A DNA stretch of 64,000 bases from Octopus bimaculoides (GCF_001194135.2 NC_068986.1:9222995-9286994); one strand, 5' to 3'. Counted from the first letter of the stretch, positions 3,749-63,895 are shown. Numbers and translations: made by a program. Notes: a model not told the origin generated them from the letters alone.

Positions 3749-3757
3749 ATGCCTGAG
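3749..3757 (+). CDS. Gene 1 coding exon 1 (MPE)
   Basis: caaaATGCCTGAG|gtagga; identical 9 nt to gene 2 exon 1; phase 0 matches exon 2. Confidence 0.85.
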
Positions 3758-6700
3758 GTAGGAAAGTTATTTATGCATTTTGTTATGTTTTCATAGTACT
3801 TATTGTTCCTTAAATTGATATCATCCAAAGTTGTCGGTTTGTTCCTATCACTGTACGCTATCTCTTGTGTAAATAACGATAGCTACCTATGAAAGCCGGT
3901 TCCACTCTCTCTTCCTCGTCCCATCAGACATTTTAATCTCGGCAGAAAAATAGAAGAAAAATGACAGATGTATTTATTTCAGAAACTACTTCACCACTTA
4001 CGGCATTCACTTTTGCTTTAAAACTCTATCGCTATCCTATTTCTGGTCAATGTGTTGTCGTAGCCGGCCTTAGTGTTGAGCTGCTGCTCCCCAACGCTCA
4101 CCTTGCTACTATTTGTAGGGTTAGTAGCCATTGGCCTTAATCACTAACAACTGCTACTGCACCATTTCACCACACATATTCTCTCTTAGATCGCTATCAA
4201 CCTATTATTAACACCAGATATATTTTCTCTTTTCCGTTATATTTATTTTATTCTCTCTCTCTTCTGGTTCATCTGTTCACATTTTTATCAGCTACCAAAC
4301 ACCTCAATGTCTTCTTATTTCGCTGCCCTTTTTTAAAAAAAAAAATTTTCCGAATTTAAAAAAAATTTTATCAGAAGTTAAAATATATTTTTTTCCTTCA
4401 AGTTAATTTAAACCAATTCCTACGTTCAAAGCACAGCTTTATTGCGTTTAACTCTTTTGGTTAAAAAAAAAATACCTCAACACAAACCCTGCAAAGTTAA
4501 TAGAAAGTTCTAGTCATTCCAAATCCAGTGACTTCGACATAGTTTCATTATTTAACTTCATATCTTCCATATCTTTATTATTTTTGCATACACCTCGGTG
4601 TACATATGTATCTATATATAAAGTGTTTTTTTAAAATGAGTGTAATAATAATAATGATTAAAATGCCATGCCGCCAGAGAAATGCATTGAGCGTATGAAT
4701 AATAAGTGAGACCTGTTTGTGGTGGTAGAAGACACATGAATGTTTCTTCGAGTGATCATGGCATCGACGCCAACAACTTCGTCGTCGTCGTCTTCTTGCA
4801 GCAGCTTTTTCCCTCCTCAACAAGTGGAGGAGCAACAATTTAAACTTCTCACATTCGAATATCGCACAAAAAAACCACACATTTTGACCAATAAAATTTA
4901 CTTATAATTCCCCAAACTTATCTTATTTTACGGCTATGTATATATATATATATATATATATAACATATATTGTTATATATTGCGCCATTGGGTTGTGATA
5001 TTTTTCTCACTTCTTGAATTGAGTGCGTGTTTAATCAGGGATTTATTTAATGAAAGATTAATAAAATATAAAAAGTTGCCATTATTTGGTAAAGTCTGGT
5101 TTGAGATAAAACAGTTTCGTTAATTTGTGGTGTAGGGTGTTGTATATAAATGGTTTGATTGTTAGTTAAGTCGGATTTAATATGCTTAATGTTCAGTTTC
5201 CTAAAATAACTTCTGACCTAGTTTATTAATTTTTTAAATAAATATATTTATATATGGCCGTATTAGTATAACGTAGATCGTCAACAAAATAATACTAAAA
5301 AAAAAACTCCGTGGTTGTTGCTTTATTTTCACTGTAAGGTTATTTTTGATCTCGCTATTAAACATTTTTTTGTGTTTATTTATAAATTTAGTTTAATTAT
5401 TCTCGAAATAAAAATCTTAAAACCAAAGCGAGCACCGGTCATTCTATTGATCTGAAAAAAAGGTAAACATATTTTGGCATCATTTAACATTTTGAAAGAT
5501 ATTTGTAAAATATCGATTGTAAAGTGGATTGATTAATAAAAAAAAAAAAAAAAAAAAAAAAAGATGCGTAGGTAATTTGAAATATTTAACCTCCAGATCC
5601 ATATGTCAAGTTTTCTATTAATAAAAAAAAAAGTCAAAATATCGATCTTTATATCGGATTCTCTGTTCAATTCCACTCGGATCAAAAAAGTTATTTAATT
5701 TTTATATATTTCTAAAAGAAAAAAAAAAAGATCAAAACAGCCAATGTATGTATGTGTGTGTTTGTGACGATTATCAATGTATCACGATTTGTCTTTTTAA
5801 ACGGAAACGAATTCTTAAATCTATTTGTGACTAAAGATAGATATGATTAATGTTACATGACGGAATCTCAGCTCGACTGAGTTGAACCGAGTGCAATATG
5901 TCTGGGTTCTGTGGCACAAAATCCAATTAGAATAATTGTGTATTCAATGACGAAGCAATTGAGTATAAAACTCTGTTATGGAACTAGTTTGGCAAGTGAA
6001 AGTTGTATTAACAACGCGTGTATAAATGTATTGTTTGCTAACATCAACAGAATAGAGTGATATACACACCTTACTCGAATTATTTTGTTCAGGTATTCTT
6101 TAATAGACACTCTATTTTATTTATATCGATAATTTTTGCTGTTTGATTATTGACATCGATTTCAAATACAATATTAAAGATGTCTAGTTTTGTTCCAAAA
6201 CACCCGGTCATCATCACCAATCTCAGACACATCAATAATTTTGAGTTTTTCTCTACTTACAGAGCTTGCTCAGTCTTTTGAATGTCCCTAACTTGGTCTG
6301 TGCCCTTCTGCCGGTGTTCCTTCAAGGGTTTTGTTTGGCGAATTAATCGATCGTTTTTCGAATTTGCAATAGCCATTTGCTATTGATTTTGCATTTCTGA
6401 CCAAAATCTTTAAGGCTTCTCTGTCGTTACGAAATATAACCACCTCTCGTCTTGGCATTGAACTGATTTCGTTAAAAAATGCATATTTGAAAAAGCAGTA
6501 ATACCTACTAAACGCGATTTTTTAAATTTTATTTTTTACAAAAAGACCCCAAAATAAAATCGATATAGTTGAAAAATAAAGTTAAGAACTAATAAAATAA
6601 AAGTATTGATGTATCAAGTGATATTTCGTAATGAGATAGAATATAGAATAGTTTCACTGATGGGTTCAGTAGCTGTGTTATTTGGTTCATATATAACCAG

Positions 6701-61063: not shown

Positions 61064-62522
61064 CTAAACATATCAAATAAAACAGATTAATATTTAAATG
61101 CATTTAAAAAATATCATCGCTAGAAAACTCTACACTAACAAGATACAAATATTGTTTTTATCAAGTTATCATATAGGCTAATCATTTTGTCACTTCATTT
61201 AGCCTGCAATGAAAATTCCTAAGCTACCACCTAACTAGACTGCAATCTATTTTAACATACTATTATTTTAGAAATTAAAATTAAATATTTTTAGGCAATA
61301 CTGGTTTGTAAAAGCCTTTCCAGTAACATCCTTATATTAAGAAATCTTCTCCTCAAAGAAGTGAAAAGAAATAAAGTAATCAACATTGCTTTTTATATAT
61401 AATATATACCCTATTACTCTAATACATACTAAACTGGCTAAAATATCAATTTGAAACAGACCCTCAATCACACAAAACAATCGAAAACTCAAAATACCTG
61501 AATGTTAAGTTGCTGCCGGGTTATTTTTTTTTTNNNNNNNNNNNNNNNNNNNNNNNNNNNNNNNNNNNNNNNNNNNNNNNNNNNNNNNNNNNNNNNNNNN
61601 NNNNNNNNNNNNNNNNNNNNNNNNNNNNNNNNNNNNNNNNNNNNNNNNNNNNNNNNNNNNNNNNNNNNNNNNNNNNNNNNNNNNNNNNNNNNNNNNNNNN
61701 NNNNNNNNNNNNNNNNNNNNNNNNNNNNNNNNNNNNNNNNNNNNNNNNNNNNNNNNNNNNNNNNNNNNNNNNNNNNNNNNNNNNNNNNNNNNNNNNNNNN
61801 NNNNNNNNNNNNNNNNNNNNNNNNNNNNNNNNNNNNNNNNNNNNNNNNNNNNNNNNNNNNNNNNNNNNNNNNNNNNNNNNNNNNNNNNNNNNNNNNNNNN
61901 NNNNNNNNNNNNNNNNNNNNNNNNNNNNNNNNNNNNNNNNNNNNNNNNNNNNNNNNNNNNNNNNNNNNNNNNNNNNNNNNNNNNNNNNNNNNNNNNNNNN
62001 NNNNNNNNNNNNNNNNNNNNNNNNNNNNNNNNNNNNNNNNNNNNNNNNNNNNNNNNNNNNNNNNNNNNNNNNNNNNNNNNNNNNNNNNNNNNNNNNNNNN
62101 NNNNNNNNNNNNNNNNNNNNNNNNNNNNNNNNNNNNNNNNNNNNNNNNNNNNNNNNNNNNNNNNNNNNNNNNNNNNNNNNNNNNNNNNNNNNNNNNNNNN
62201 NNNNNNNNNNNNNNNNNNNNNNNNNNNNNNNNNNNNNNNNNNNNNNNNNNNNNNNNNNNNNNNNNNNNNNNNNNNNNNNNNNNNNNNNNNNNNNNNNNNN
62301 NNNNNNNNNNNNNNNNNNNNNNNNNNNNNNNNNNNNNNNNNNNNNNNNNNNNNNNNNNNNNNNNNNNNNNNNNNNNNNNNNNNNNNNNNNNNNNNNNNNN
62401 NNNNNNNNNNNNNNNNNNNNNNNNNNNNNNNNNNNNNNNNNNNNNNNNNNNNNNNNNNNNNNNNNNNNNNNNNNNNNNNNNNNNNNNNNNNNNNNNNNNN
62501 NNNNNNNNNNNNNNNNNNNNNN

Positions 62523-63895
62523 ATATCCACCGGGTCCTCCACCACCTCCACCTCCATAGCCACCGCCACCACCATATCCACCAGGCCCTCCGCCACCTCC
62601 ACCAGGTCCATAGTTCCCACTGGGTCCTCCACCTCCACCATATCCACCCCCTCCATAACCGCCGCCACCACCAGGTCCTCCACCCCCTCCATAACCACCC
62701 CCACCAGGTCCTCCTCCACCACCACCACCATAACCGCTACCTCCGAAATTTCCTGTGGAAACAAAGTAAAAATCATAGCTTCAACGACATGTAACATACA
62801 AAACATCCTAAGAAATTTGTCAAACGGAACTAAGTCAAAATTTAAGGACGATAAAGCTTGAAAACCATTTTAAAGCAGAGGATTTAAAATAATGAGCAAT
62901 TATTCCATGTCTAACAAAACAGTTTTACAAATCAAAAACAAAACAAAATCCACAATTGTCAATGATTTAGCAAATGCTTTTGTATTATGAGGGATAAAAA
63001 ATATGAAAGGGTAGTTTTTAACGTACCATAACCACCTCCAGCACCAAAGTTGTCTCTTCCAAAGCCTCTACCAAATCCAGGAGACCACTCACCATCAGAG
63101 CCACCTAGAATGAGAACACCAAAATCCCTCGCTCAACACTGAATCGCATACAATAATGTTCAGATATAAAACATGCATCAAAATAACTCATTATTACAGC
63201 TACCCCTAAATTATAAAATTACTGAAGCATACATCACTAGTTCTCATTGGACATTATTTCCTAACTTAGAAAAAAAAAGTATTTGAAATAAAACGAATAA
63301 ATAATTGGGCAGTAAAAGAGTCAACAACAGACTTTCAAGAATGGTTAAGTGCAATCACAAACCTACCTCTTCCACCCATACCACCTCTCATGGGGCCAGG
63401 ACCGTCATTGCCACCTCGTCCACCTCGAGGACCTGCACAATAGAATTTACAATTTGAGGTACACAATTTAGCTCCCTCACTAAAACCATCTCCCCCATCC
63501 ATAATCAATTTACAGAAATTCAAATTCATGCAAATAAGGACATCATTATGTATTTGGACAATACAGTCGTCGGAATATCCAGTCTACTAATATACTAACA
63601 AAACCCTATTGTTGTTGTTGTTGTTGCTACTATTTCATTGCATTTCAGCAACTCTATCGAACATTCATTGCATTTCACACTAACTCTACCAAACGGGAAG
63701 TAATGACTACCAAACTAAATATCAAACTAAAACCAGTTTTTTCAGAAAAGAAAGGGTCAGACTTACCTCCACTGCCGCCGCCGCCACCACCACCATAGCC
63801 AGGTCCACCACCCATTCTGCTATTGTTTATTTCAGAGCGAGACAGAGCCTTCTTCACTTCAATTTGCTTTCCATTTAAAGTCAAGTACTTTTTCA
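62523..63895 (-). CDS. HNRNPA1-like: hnRNP A/B family protein, paralog 3 (3' part; 5' exons beyond window, final codons in gap)
   Basis: Minus-strand exons 63767-63895 ([24 protein letters not shown]2 end), 63367-63432 (GPRGGRGG...GPMRGG), 63027-63104, 62523-62752 (GGPGGY repeats into Ns); GT-AG sites; the first three are phase 1-1 and the fourth has a phase-1 acceptor; same RRM2-end boundary as genes 1 and 2. Confidence 0.92.

What the first reader, a model, noticed from the sequence alone, without database searches (positions are those of the whole stretch)
3749..63895. Three-gene hnRNP A/B cluster with conserved RRMs but very different prion-like domains
Seen: three paralogs within 60 kb, two in tandem on + and one convergent on -. 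Genes 1 and 2 share ATGCCTGAG|gt, a 121-nt exon 3 and all RRM intron phases; gene 3 shares the RRM2-end boundary. The tails differ: gene 1 is G/N/W-rich with M9, gene 2 has GPM repeats and His-rich GY without PY, gene 3 has long GGPGGY runs. Established: vertebrate A1/A2B1/A3 and fly Hrb87F/Hrb98DE are not clustered like this; LCD composition governs phase separation and localisation; hnRNP A/B-type proteins have been reported in squid presynaptic RNPs. Inference: a local, possibly cephalopod-specific expansion that split nuclear and cytoplasmic/neuronal RNA-granule roles, relevant to the unusual coleoid RNA biology.
Basis: partly seen in the sequence, partly recalled or inferred. Interest (0 to 1): 0.75.

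Follow-up and report, generated by a model that had tools for sequence, protein, structure and literature searches.

The report
Octopus hnRNP A gene trio
This stretch of Octopus bimaculoides DNA holds three neighbouring, anciently diverged copies of an ordinary RNA-binding protein gene (hnRNP A type) with similar RNA-binding parts but very different glycine-rich tails; it is a real and tidy gene cluster, but a family expansion of a familiar kind.

Summary
The window is Octopus bimaculoides. Gene 1 (+, 3749-17563, 11 coding exons, 332 aa) and gene 2 (+, 20368-30574, an exact match to RefSeq "hnRNP A3 isoform X5") are complete. Gene 3 (-, 63895 down to the gap) is cut twice. Its RRM1 and most of RRM2 lie beyond base 64000, and the gap at 61534-62522 hides the rest of its Gly-rich exon, any PY exon and the stop codon.

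The shared features (MPE start, 121-nt exon, intron phases 0/2/0/1) also occur in a land snail gene. They mark the family, not a recent duplication.

On RRM trees, genes 2 and 3 are sisters (89-97% bootstrap). Gene 1 groups instead with dispersed paralogs, two of which have intronless coding sequences and are probably retrogenes. The three genes never form an exclusive clade (0-3%). RRM identity between them is only 63-71%. Cuttlefish orthologs place the gene 2/gene 3 split and the splits that produced the P0028 and P0030 types before octopus and cuttlefish diverged. Whether gene 1 split from genes 2/3 before cephalopods arose is unresolved.

Gene 2 lacks a PY-NLS in three species. Gene 3 is under strong purifying selection, and a distant ortholog carries a 449-aa tail that is 70% glycine.

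"Local cephalopod expansion" is therefore partly supported. The proposed nuclear versus cytoplasmic split is untested.

The parts
3749..17563 (+). Gene 1: hnRNP A1-like gene, ATG to stop. 11 coding exons: 3749-3757, 7672-7826, 8283-8403, 8884-9088, 9187-9264, 9378-9398, 13753-13797, 13972-14019, 14414-14563, 15305-15418, 17511-17563. 332 aa.
   Evidence: The spliced model has all GT-AG introns. It is colinear with and about 98% identical to O. sinensis hnRNP A1 X2. Pfam finds 2x RRM_1.
8283..8403 (+). Gene 1, 121-nt exon (second half of RRM1, starting with the RNP-1 motif SRGFGFVTY).
   Evidence: The same 121-nt exon is in gene 2, in the gene 3 ortholog (L001 9110-9230) and in a Bradybaena gene.
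15305..15418 (+). Gene 1 M9-like PY-NLS exon (…[29 protein letters not shown]).
   Evidence: It matches the hydrophobic PY-NLS pattern and is 16/28 identical to the vertebrate hnRNP A1 M9 core. Pfam PF11627 is not hit.
11777..12704 (.). Assembly gap inside intron 6 of gene 1.
   Evidence: No residue of the O. sinensis ortholog is missing on either side.
20368..30574 (+). Gene 2: PY-NLS-less hnRNP A paralog (RefSeq 'hnRNP A3 isoform X5'). Exons: 20368-20376, 22573-22629 (optional 57 nt), 23068-23231, 24293-24413, 24504-24705, 24841-25035, 25139-25174, 27808-27870, 30264-30365, 30525-30574.
   Evidence: The translation equals P0061 exactly. Pfam finds 2x RRM_1. No R/K/H-X2-5-PY motif in O. bimaculoides, O. 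vulgaris or the Acanthosepion ortholog.
24841..25035 (+). Gene 2 exon holding the end of RRM2 and the Gly-Pro-Met repeats ([32 protein letters not shown]).
26440..26511 (+). Gene 2 alternative 72-nt cassette exon ([24 protein letters not shown]), phase 1-1.
   Evidence: 100% tblastn match to O. vulgaris isoform P0071. AG/GT borders were read.
21621..21630 (.). 10-N gap inside intron 1 of gene 2.
41979..42518 (.). Assembly gap in the gene 2-gene 3 intergenic region.
   Evidence: No RRM-like coding hits were found between 31 and 60 kb.
63767..63895 (-). Gene 3 exon A: end of RRM2 plus the start of the tail ([44 protein letters not shown]). The acceptor is in phase 1, as in genes 1 and 2.
   Evidence: Conserved in L008 (89% nt) and L001 (82% nt).
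63367..63432 (-). Gene 3 exon B (GPRGGRGGNDGPGPMRGGMGGRG), 66 nt, phase 1-1.
   Evidence: In L008 the exon is 57 nt, an in-frame difference.
63027..63104 (-). Gene 3 exon C (GGSDGEWSPGFGRGFGRDNFGAGGGYG), 78 nt, phase 1-1.
62523..62752 (-). Gene 3 exon D, visible part only: GGPGGY / GGGGY repeat exon running into the gap.
   Evidence: It is a tandem-repeat region by TRF. The ortholog's exon is 921 nt.
61534..62522 (.). Assembly gap that truncates the gene 3 CDS. It hides the rest of exon D, the expected PY-NLS exon, the last exon and the stop codon.
   Evidence: Sequence right after the gap (GGCAGCAACTTAACATTCAGGTATTT) aligns to L001 just after its stop codon. In L001 the stretch from exon D start to stop is 4.25 kb, against 1.25 kb here.
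60899..61533 (-). Gene 3 3'UTR, including a strongly conserved element at 60899-61137.
   Evidence: 85% (blastn) to 89% (MAFFT) identity to L001, although synonymous sites between the two are saturated.

Best explanation
The window holds a conserved octopod locus with three intron-containing genes of the hnRNP A (A1/A2B1/A3, Hrb87F) family. Each has two N-terminal RRMs and a glycine-rich low-complexity tail.

Shown here:
- The three genes are old paralogs. Genes 2 and 3 are sisters and lie tail to tail, which fits a local inverted duplication made before octopus and cuttlefish lineages split.
- Gene 1 belongs to a second cephalopod subfamily. That subfamily also contains dispersed paralogs, two of which have intronless coding sequences.
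- The gene 1 then gene 2 tandem is kept in O. vulgaris and Argonauta.
- All tail exons are phase 1-1 cassettes that split a Gly codon. Any combination stays in frame, and annotated isoforms do differ by such exons.
- Gene 1 keeps an M9-type PY-NLS. Gene 2 has none in three species. Gene 3's ortholog has one, plus a 449-aa tail that is 70% Gly.

Inferred from the family, not shown here:
- The dispersed intronless copies arose by retroposition from the gene 1 lineage.
- The RRMs bind single-stranded RNA.
- The PY-NLS drives transportin-dependent nuclear import, so gene 2 is imported another way or is more cytoplasmic.
- Tail length and composition tune self-association and granule behaviour.
For: - Gene models.
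- Family identity: the best hits are hnRNP A1/A2B1/A3/87F proteins. Pfam finds 2x RRM_1 in genes 1 and 2 and in the gene 3 ortholog.
- Trees on 171 RRM columns with 122-125 sequences: gene 2+gene 3 at 89-97%; gene 1 plus the P0021/P0028/P0030 types at 80-90%; exclusive gene 1+2+3 at 0-3%.
- Age: RRM identity 63.5/66.5/71.2%. Cuttlefish orthologs exist for gene 2 (P0073) and for the P0028 and P0030 types.
- Intronless CDS of P0021 (L005) and P0030 (L003).
- Tandem conserved in O. vulgaris and Argonauta hians.
- Gene 3 is functional. Against L001, dN/dS is 0.055 with saturated dS. Against L008, exon identity is 87-97% and intron identity 75-81%, with only in-frame indels in exons A-C (+3, -9, +6 nt). 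A contiguous 364-aa ORF of this type sits on a 2.8-kb ENA contig, probably a transcript.
- PY-NLS pattern.
- Cassette isoforms: P0001 versus P0003, and P0061 versus P0071.
Against: - The trees are neighbour-joining only, on 171 columns. They have no outgroup such as hnRNP A0, hnRNP D or Musashi, and many sequences are of unknown species.
- The node joining all cephalopod copies is unresolved (17-24%).
- Gene 3's RRMs are not in the window.
- The species of L001 and P0125 are unknown.
- No poly(A) tract or target-site duplication was examined for the presumed retrogenes.
- No expression, localisation or binding data of any kind were available.
Confidence: 0.72

Rival explanations
1. Ancient linkage. 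Gene 1 and the gene 2/3 lineage were already separate before cephalopods arose, for example with gene 2/3 orthologous to the PY-less gastropod paralogs. The cluster would then be an old neighbourhood kept in octopods, not a cephalopod expansion.
For: - Gene 1 is no closer to genes 2/3 (63-66%) than genes 2/3 are to gastropod proteins (65-68%).
- All-cephalopod monophyly gets only 17-24% bootstrap.
- Gastropods also have PY-less paralogs (Babylonia P0039, Littorina P0101, Biomphalaria P0081, Arion P0088). Some have Met/Gly/Pro-rich stretches after RRM2 that recall gene 2.
Against: - Gene 2/3 plus the PY-less gastropod group is recovered in 0-1% of bootstraps.
- The Babylonia paralogs, and likewise the Nucella paralogs, sit on contigs of different length, so they are on different contigs.
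- The Bradybaena tandem copies are recent, lineage-specific duplicates.
- Similarity between low-complexity tails can be convergent.
Confidence: 0.2
2. Gene 3 is a decaying copy or an assembly artefact, so the locus really holds only two working genes.
For: - No NCBI or UniProt protein containing its RRM2-end exon was retrieved.
- Its coding sequence is broken by a gap and by the end of the window.
Against: - All visible splice sites are canonical and the frames are open.
- dN/dS is 0.055 against a distant ortholog.
- Only in-frame indels separate it from a closer species.
- A complete 9-exon ortholog exists in L001, and a contiguous ORF of the same type on an ENA contig.
- It is only 71% identical to gene 2, so it is not a collapsed or duplicated assembly of gene 2.
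Confidence: 0.05

Closest known systems
Vertebrate hnRNP A1 / A2B1 / A3 (hnRNP A/B family)
   Same: Two tandem RRMs with RNP-2 LFIGGL / MFVGGL and RNP-1 RGFGFVTY / RGFCFVTY. A Gly-rich tail with RGG and GY motifs. Gene 1 has an M9-type PY-NLS that is 16/28 identical to the vertebrate A1 core. Gly-rich cassette exons are alternatively spliced. Vertebrate A1/A3 proteins are among the hits at 45-55% identity.
   Different: From my own knowledge, not tested here: the vertebrate genes are dispersed on different chromosomes. Here three lie within 60 kb. Gene 2 has no PY-NLS. The gene 3 ortholog's tail is 449 aa and 70% Gly, several times the vertebrate length. Pfam's HnRNPA1 (PF11627) model does not score on gene 1.
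Drosophila Hrb87F / Hrb98DE and other protostome '87F-like' proteins
   Same: The same 2xRRM plus Gly-rich architecture. Many mollusc and arthropod hits carry this name.
   Different: In the tree all arthropod sequences fall outside the mollusc clade (97%). From my own knowledge, the fly pair is not adjacent.
Squid hnRNPA/B-like Protein 1 and 2 (p65 of presynaptic terminals; Lico 2015, Lopes 2020)
   Same: Cephalopod members of the same family, about 36-38 kDa, close to the 332-aa size of genes 1 and 2 (bioRxiv 10.1101/2021.07.02.450876; PMC8389229).
   Different: I had no squid sequences, so I could not say which of the six octopus lineages each squid protein corresponds to.
Mammalian HNRNPA1 retrocopies and processed pseudogenes
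   Same: Intronless copies of an intron-rich hnRNP A gene dispersed in the genome. The review PMC8389229 cites papers on A2/B1 and A3 processed pseudogenes. P0021 and P0030 have intronless CDS.
   Different: The octopus copies have intact ORFs. Close relatives occur in Logan transcript-sized contigs, and cuttlefish orthologs exist for the P0028 and P0030 types. They are therefore old working genes, not pseudogenes.
Tandem hnRNP A copies in the land snail Bradybaena similaris (BsWGS_09524-09526)
   Same: Several hnRNP A-type genes lie side by side on one chromosome with identical RRM intron positions.
   Different: The snail copies cluster tightly with each other and with other stylommatophoran sequences (96-100%). 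They are a recent, independent duplication, not orthologs of the octopus trio.

Membership tests
hnRNP A/B (A1/A2B1/A3, Hrb87F-type) proteins | Two consecutive N-terminal RRMs with canonical RNP-2 and RNP-1 motifs | tested here: met
   Pfam finds RRM_1 x2 in gene 1 (E 2e-38), gene 2 (1.2e-37) and the gene 3 ortholog from L001 (4e-37). For gene 3 itself only the last 28 residues of RRM2 are in the window.
hnRNP A/B (A1/A2B1/A3, Hrb87F-type) proteins | Closest relatives are named hnRNP A proteins rather than other 2xRRM families | tested here: met
   All named hits in the top 120 for gene 1 are hnRNP A1/A2B1/A3/87F-type. Gene 2 equals RefSeq 'hnRNP A3 isoform X5'. No hnRNP D, DAZAP1 or Musashi outgroup was included.
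hnRNP A/B (A1/A2B1/A3, Hrb87F-type) proteins | C-terminal glycine-rich low-complexity domain with RGG and GY/GF motifs | tested here: met
   Tails are 36%, 48% and 66-70% Gly.
hnRNP A/B (A1/A2B1/A3, Hrb87F-type) proteins | M9-type PY-NLS (hydrophobic motif followed by R-X2-5-PY) in the tail | tested here: inconclusive
   Gene 1: met by motif and by alignment to vertebrate A1, but Pfam PF11627 is not hit. Gene 2: not met in three species. Gene 3: hidden by the gap in the window; its L001 ortholog has RGSGPY.
Local (tandem or inverted) duplication cluster | Members are each other's closest relatives | tested here: not met
   Met for gene 2 + gene 3 (89-97%). Not met for the trio: exclusive gene 1+2+3 clade in 0-3% of bootstraps, and gene 1 groups with dispersed paralogs.
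Local (tandem or inverted) duplication cluster | Physical adjacency conserved in related species | tested here: met
   Gene 1 then gene 2 in tandem in O. vulgaris (L002) and Argonauta hians (L007). Gene 3's position in other species could not be reached.
Cephalopod-specific expansion | All copies form one clade that excludes other molluscs | tested here: inconclusive
   There are two cephalopod-only clades (93% and 80%), but their union gets only 17-24% bootstrap. No named Nautilus sequence was available.
Retrogenes (for the dispersed paralogs P0021, P0030) | Loss of all coding introns relative to the parent family | tested here: met
   L005 10001-11011 translates directly to P0021. P0030 matches L003 10001-10855 in one piece at 100%. 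The cluster genes have 8-10 coding introns.
Retrogenes (for the dispersed paralogs P0021, P0030) | Poly(A) remnant and target-site duplications | not tested
   These are expected to be eroded in copies this old, and I did not examine them.

The most novel reading that the evidence does not exclude
Gene 3 represents a coleoid-specific hnRNP A lineage whose defining trait is a giant tail (about 450 aa, 70% Gly, built of GGGGSGGGGY / GGPGGY tandem repeats) and a strongly conserved 3'UTR element. Under this reading, octopus genome annotations have missed it because its repeat exon breaks assemblies. Together with a PY-NLS-less sister (gene 2) and gene 1-derived retrogenes, coleoids would carry an unusually diversified set of six hnRNP A scaffolds. 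These could underlie specialised RNA granules in their large neurons.
Probability: 0.3. Interest if true: 0.55.

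Novelty: new member of a known kind. Interest (0 to 1): 0.35.

Why it matters
hnRNP A proteins are central to splicing, mRNA transport and stress or neuronal granules. Their low-complexity tails are the textbook case of sequence-encoded phase separation and of disease-linked aggregation.

Octopus offers a natural series of six paralogs, three of them adjacent, with near-constant RRMs and strongly different tails:
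- a tail with an M9 signal (gene 1);
- a tail with no PY-NLS (gene 2);
- a giant Gly/Tyr tail (gene 3).

That series could be used to ask how tail composition sets localisation and granule behaviour in an animal with very large neurons and heavy RNA editing.

The practical result is more modest. The cluster is real and old, it is partly a local duplication and partly accompanied by retrogenes, and one member is truncated by an assembly gap and appears to be missing from protein sets.

Tried and rejected
- Protein search with the whole visible gene 3 fragment was swamped by Gly-rich words and returned nothing. A trimmed 57-aa query found only two ORF fragments.
- Exact-protein look-ups failed for P0061, P0046, P0017, P0073 and P0012. 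I therefore could not check the O. bimaculoides record itself, the cuttlefish neighbourhood or the Pomacea pair.
- The Logan contigs carrying gene 3's exon A (L008-L010) stop 217 nt beyond the window end and do not reach the RRM2 main exon.
- I could not reach the gene 2 or gene 1 orthologs on the 262-kb contig that holds L001.
- Rfam found nothing in the window.
- The conserved gene 3 3'UTR element has no counterpart in the gene 1 or gene 2 3'UTRs.
- Recent gene conversion between genes 1 and 2 is rejected. Nucleotide similarity is confined to the RRM exons at 66-73%.
- A hidden PY exon in gene 2 is rejected. PY-exon peptides from four paralogs hit only 15305-15420.
- Other genes between 31 and 60 kb are rejected. 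Only mariner transposase fragments were found.
- P0125's 165-aa N-terminal extension has no match in the 8.7 kb upstream of the L001 gene, so it may be a translated 5'UTR.

Full report
WHAT IS THERE

The window is 35% G+C, has five runs of N and comes from Octopus bimaculoides. The spliced coding sequence I built for the middle gene translates exactly to the RefSeq protein [quoted passage not shown] (P0061).

The string ATGCCTGAGGT occurs twice, at 3749 and 20368, both on the + strand. All RRM-like coding pieces in the window belong to three loci.

Gene 1 (+) has 11 coding exons: 3749-3757, 7672-7826, 8283-8403, 8884-9088, 9187-9264, 9378-9398, 13753-13797, 13972-14019, 14414-14563, 15305-15418 and 17511-17563. 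All introns are GT-AG. The 332-aa product aligns end to end with O. sinensis hnRNP A1 isoform X2 at about 98% identity.

Gene 2 (+) has exons 20368-20376, 22573-22629, 23068-23231, 24293-24413, 24504-24705, 24841-25035, 25139-25174, 27808-27870, 30264-30365 and 30525-30574. A further 72-nt cassette at 26440-26511 is used in an O. vulgaris isoform.

Gene 3 (-) is only partly present. Its visible exons are A 63895-63767, B 63432-63367, C 63104-63027 and D 62752-62523, and exon D runs into a gap. Genes 2 and 3 face each other's 3' ends, so "convergent" is correct.

THE GAPS

- 11777-12704 lies in intron 6 of gene 1, and no residue is missing relative to the ortholog.
- 21621-21630 lies in intron 1 of gene 2, and the CDS is exact.
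- 41979-42518 is intergenic.
- 61534-62522 does matter. Gene 3's Gly-rich exon enters it. The first bases on the far side are homologous to the sequence that follows the stop codon in an ortholog.

In that ortholog (L001) the distance from the start of exon D to the stop is 4.25 kb, against 1.25 kb here. The gap therefore hides the rest of exon D, two introns, a PY-NLS exon and the last exon, and its true length is probably several kb. The exon is a tandem-repeat region, which explains the assembly failure.

- Both complete genes have a 9-nt MPE start exon (phase 0), an RRM1 exon ending in phase 2, a 121-nt exon ending in phase 0 and an RRM2 exon ending in phase 1.
- Gene 3's exon A starts at the same phase-1 position.
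- Every tail exon in all three genes is a multiple of 3 nt and splits a Gly codon. Any subset can therefore be skipped in frame. Annotated isoforms differ in exactly this way (P0001 versus P0003; P0061 versus P0071).
- Tail composition: gene 1 is G 36% and N 18%, with five Trp; gene 2 is G 48%, P 11%, M 7% and H 5%; gene 3's visible part is G 66%.
- Gene 1 carries [17 protein letters not shown]. This fits the hydrophobic PY-NLS rule and is 16/28 identical to the vertebrate A1 M9 core. Pfam's PF11627 model does not score.
- Gene 2 has no R/K/H-X2-5-PY motif in O. bimaculoides, O. vulgaris or the cuttlefish Acanthosepion. No PY-like exon is hidden in its introns.

WHAT GENE 3 IS

Two searches for its RRM2-end exon found no named protein, only ORF fragments.

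One fragment led to a 20-kb piece of a 262-kb ENA contig (L001). It holds a complete ortholog with two RRMs and the same intron positions, including a 121-nt and a 202-nt exon. It also has a 921-nt repeat exon, a PY exon (SYSQRGSGPYG) and a ...SYRR stop. The product is at least 642 aa, with a 449-aa tail that is 70% Gly.

Several lines of evidence show that gene 3 is a working gene.
- Between the window and L001, synonymous sites are saturated (pS 0.68) while pN is 0.09, giving dN/dS of about 0.055.
- A closer species (Logan contigs L008-L010) has exons A-D at 87-97% identity against 75-81% for introns.
- That closer species differs only by in-frame indels in exons A-C of +3, -9 and +6 nt.
- A 364-aa contiguous ORF of the same type (P0125) is 86% identical to L001 in the RRMs. 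It sits on a 2.8-kb ENA contig that is probably a transcript.

Gene 3 is therefore a conserved, working gene and not a relic. Its RRMs in O. bimaculoides itself lie beyond base 64000.

HOW THE THREE GENES ARE RELATED

RRM-region identities are 63.5% for gene 1/gene 2, 66.5% for gene 1/gene 3 ortholog and 71.2% for gene 2/gene 3 ortholog. These values are no higher than identities to gastropod proteins (65-68%). At the DNA level genes 1 and 2 match only in the RRM exons, at 66-73%.

I ran neighbour-joining trees on 171 columns and 122-125 sequences, with four distance corrections and 100-200 bootstraps.

| Grouping | Bootstrap |
|---|---|
| All molluscs | 97% |
| Gene 2 + gene 3 | 89-97% |
| Gene 1 + P0021, P0028 and P0030 types | 80-90% |
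| Genes 1+2+3 as an exclusive clade | 0-3% |
| All cephalopod copies together | 17-24% |
| Genes 2/3 + PY-less gastropod paralogs | 0-1% |

Cuttlefish orthologs exist for gene 2 (P0073) and for the P0028 and P0030 types. The gene 2/gene 3 split and the splits that produced the P0028 and P0030 types therefore predate the octopus-cuttlefish divergence.

THE DISPERSED PARALOGS

P0021 lies on another O. bimaculoides chromosome (CM046620.1, 26.3 Mb) as a single uninterrupted 1011-nt ORF. P0030 lies 22.7 Mb from the cluster on the same O. vulgaris chromosome, and its coding sequence also has no introns.

Both start with MPE. I read them as old retrogenes derived from the gene 1 lineage. I did not examine poly(A) remnants or target-site duplications.

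FAMILY-WIDE FEATURES AND OTHER MOLLUSCS

A Bradybaena similaris gene has the same three RRM-region introns, with the same phases and a 121-nt exon. These features therefore say nothing about how recently genes 1 and 2 separated.

The snail has its own tandem copies (BsWGS_09524-09526 plus another copy in L004). They cluster tightly with one another, so they are an independent recent duplication. The two Babylonia paralogs are on different contigs, as are the two Nucella paralogs. I found no non-cephalopod counterpart of the trio, but I could not inspect Pomacea, the oysters or Nautilus.

The gene 1 then gene 2 tandem is conserved in O. vulgaris and Argonauta hians.

MECHANISM

Shown:
- the architecture of the proteins;
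- in-frame cassette exons in all three tails;
- the presence or absence of the PY-NLS;
- purifying selection on gene 3.

Inferred from what is known of hnRNP A proteins:
- the RRMs bind single-stranded RNA;
- the PY-NLS is read by transportin for nuclear import, so gene 2 protein should enter the nucleus by another route or stay more cytoplasmic;
- tail length and composition set the strength of self-association in granules, with gene 3 at the extreme.

COMPARISON AND NOVELTY

These are members of the hnRNP A/B family. Genes 1 and 2 are already annotated in public octopus genomes. I found no paper describing a cephalopod hnRNP A expansion in the searchable library. Squid presynaptic hnRNPA/B-like proteins are documented.

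What is new is modest:
- the three-gene arrangement;
- the sister relation of genes 2 and 3;
- the likely retrogene origin of other family members;
- an apparently unannotated third gene with an extreme tail in its ortholog.

I rate it as a new member of a known kind, with interest 0.35.

Noticed in passing
window 60899-61137 (- strand), L001 18316-18557: A roughly 240-nt segment of gene 3's 3'UTR is 85-89% identical between two species whose synonymous sites are saturated. It contains two copies of a TTGTACTTAGTGTAACC...GGCA motif and several UAG-containing stretches. It might be a regulatory element such as an autoregulatory binding platform. It has no counterpart in the gene 1 or gene 2 3'UTRs.
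   Followed up: partly
L005 10001-11011 (O. bimaculoides CM046620.1) and L003 10001-10855 (O. vulgaris OX597819.1): Two further octopus hnRNP A paralogs (P0021, P0030) have intronless coding sequences, whereas the cluster genes have 8-10 coding introns. They look like old, functional retrogenes of the gene 1 lineage.
   Followed up: partly
window 53040-53354 (-) and 38843-39058 (-): ORF fragments match the mariner-type Transposase_1 domain (E 1e-10 and 2e-11). These are decayed transposons in the gene 2-gene 3 intergenic region. No other gene was seen there.
   Followed up: yes
window 15431-15720, with partial copies near 41-126, 1094-1151, 16762-16839, 43532-43707, 45298-45388: A short interspersed repeat recurs in introns and intergenic DNA. 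In one frame it translates as ...LTSAFHAGMGW.... In addition, 14955-15057 is 100% identical to part of the 15431-15720 copy.
   Followed up: partly
L004 (Bradybaena similaris AP039587.1, 66.29-66.39 Mb): The land snail has at least two RRM-gene copies within 102 kb (at about 19.6-22.5 kb and 72.5-78.3 kb of the locus). Two near-identical annotated genes lie next door. This is an independent tandem expansion of the same family.
   Followed up: partly
P0004 and P0071 (O. vulgaris annotation), compared with window 14414-18189 and 22958-23059: The O. vulgaris protein models look mis-built. P0004's C-terminal 100 residues are out-of-frame translations of gene 1 tail exons. P0071's N-terminal 37 residues come from intron sequence upstream of the RRM1 exon.
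   Followed up: no
L001 8872-8874 / 9110: In the gene 3 ortholog, the codon split by the RRM1 intron reads TG|G (Trp) where the family has a conserved Arg/Lys (KTK-W-SRGFGF). This is either a real substitution just before RNP-1 or an assembly error.
   Followed up: no
P0125 residues 1-165: The ENA gene 3-type ORF has a 165-aa acidic, Arg-rich N-terminal extension. It has no match in the 8.7 kb upstream of the L001 gene. It may be a translated 5'UTR or a real extra domain.
   Followed up: partly
window 1637-2011: A fifth assembly gap lies outside the finding. It is flanked by TA/TATA and (CA)n-type microsatellites.
   Followed up: no
window 22573-22629: Gene 2 has an optional 57-nt exon ([19 protein letters not shown]) between the MPE start exon and RRM1. 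Because of it, the '121-nt exon 3' is exon 4 in isoform X5.
   Followed up: yes
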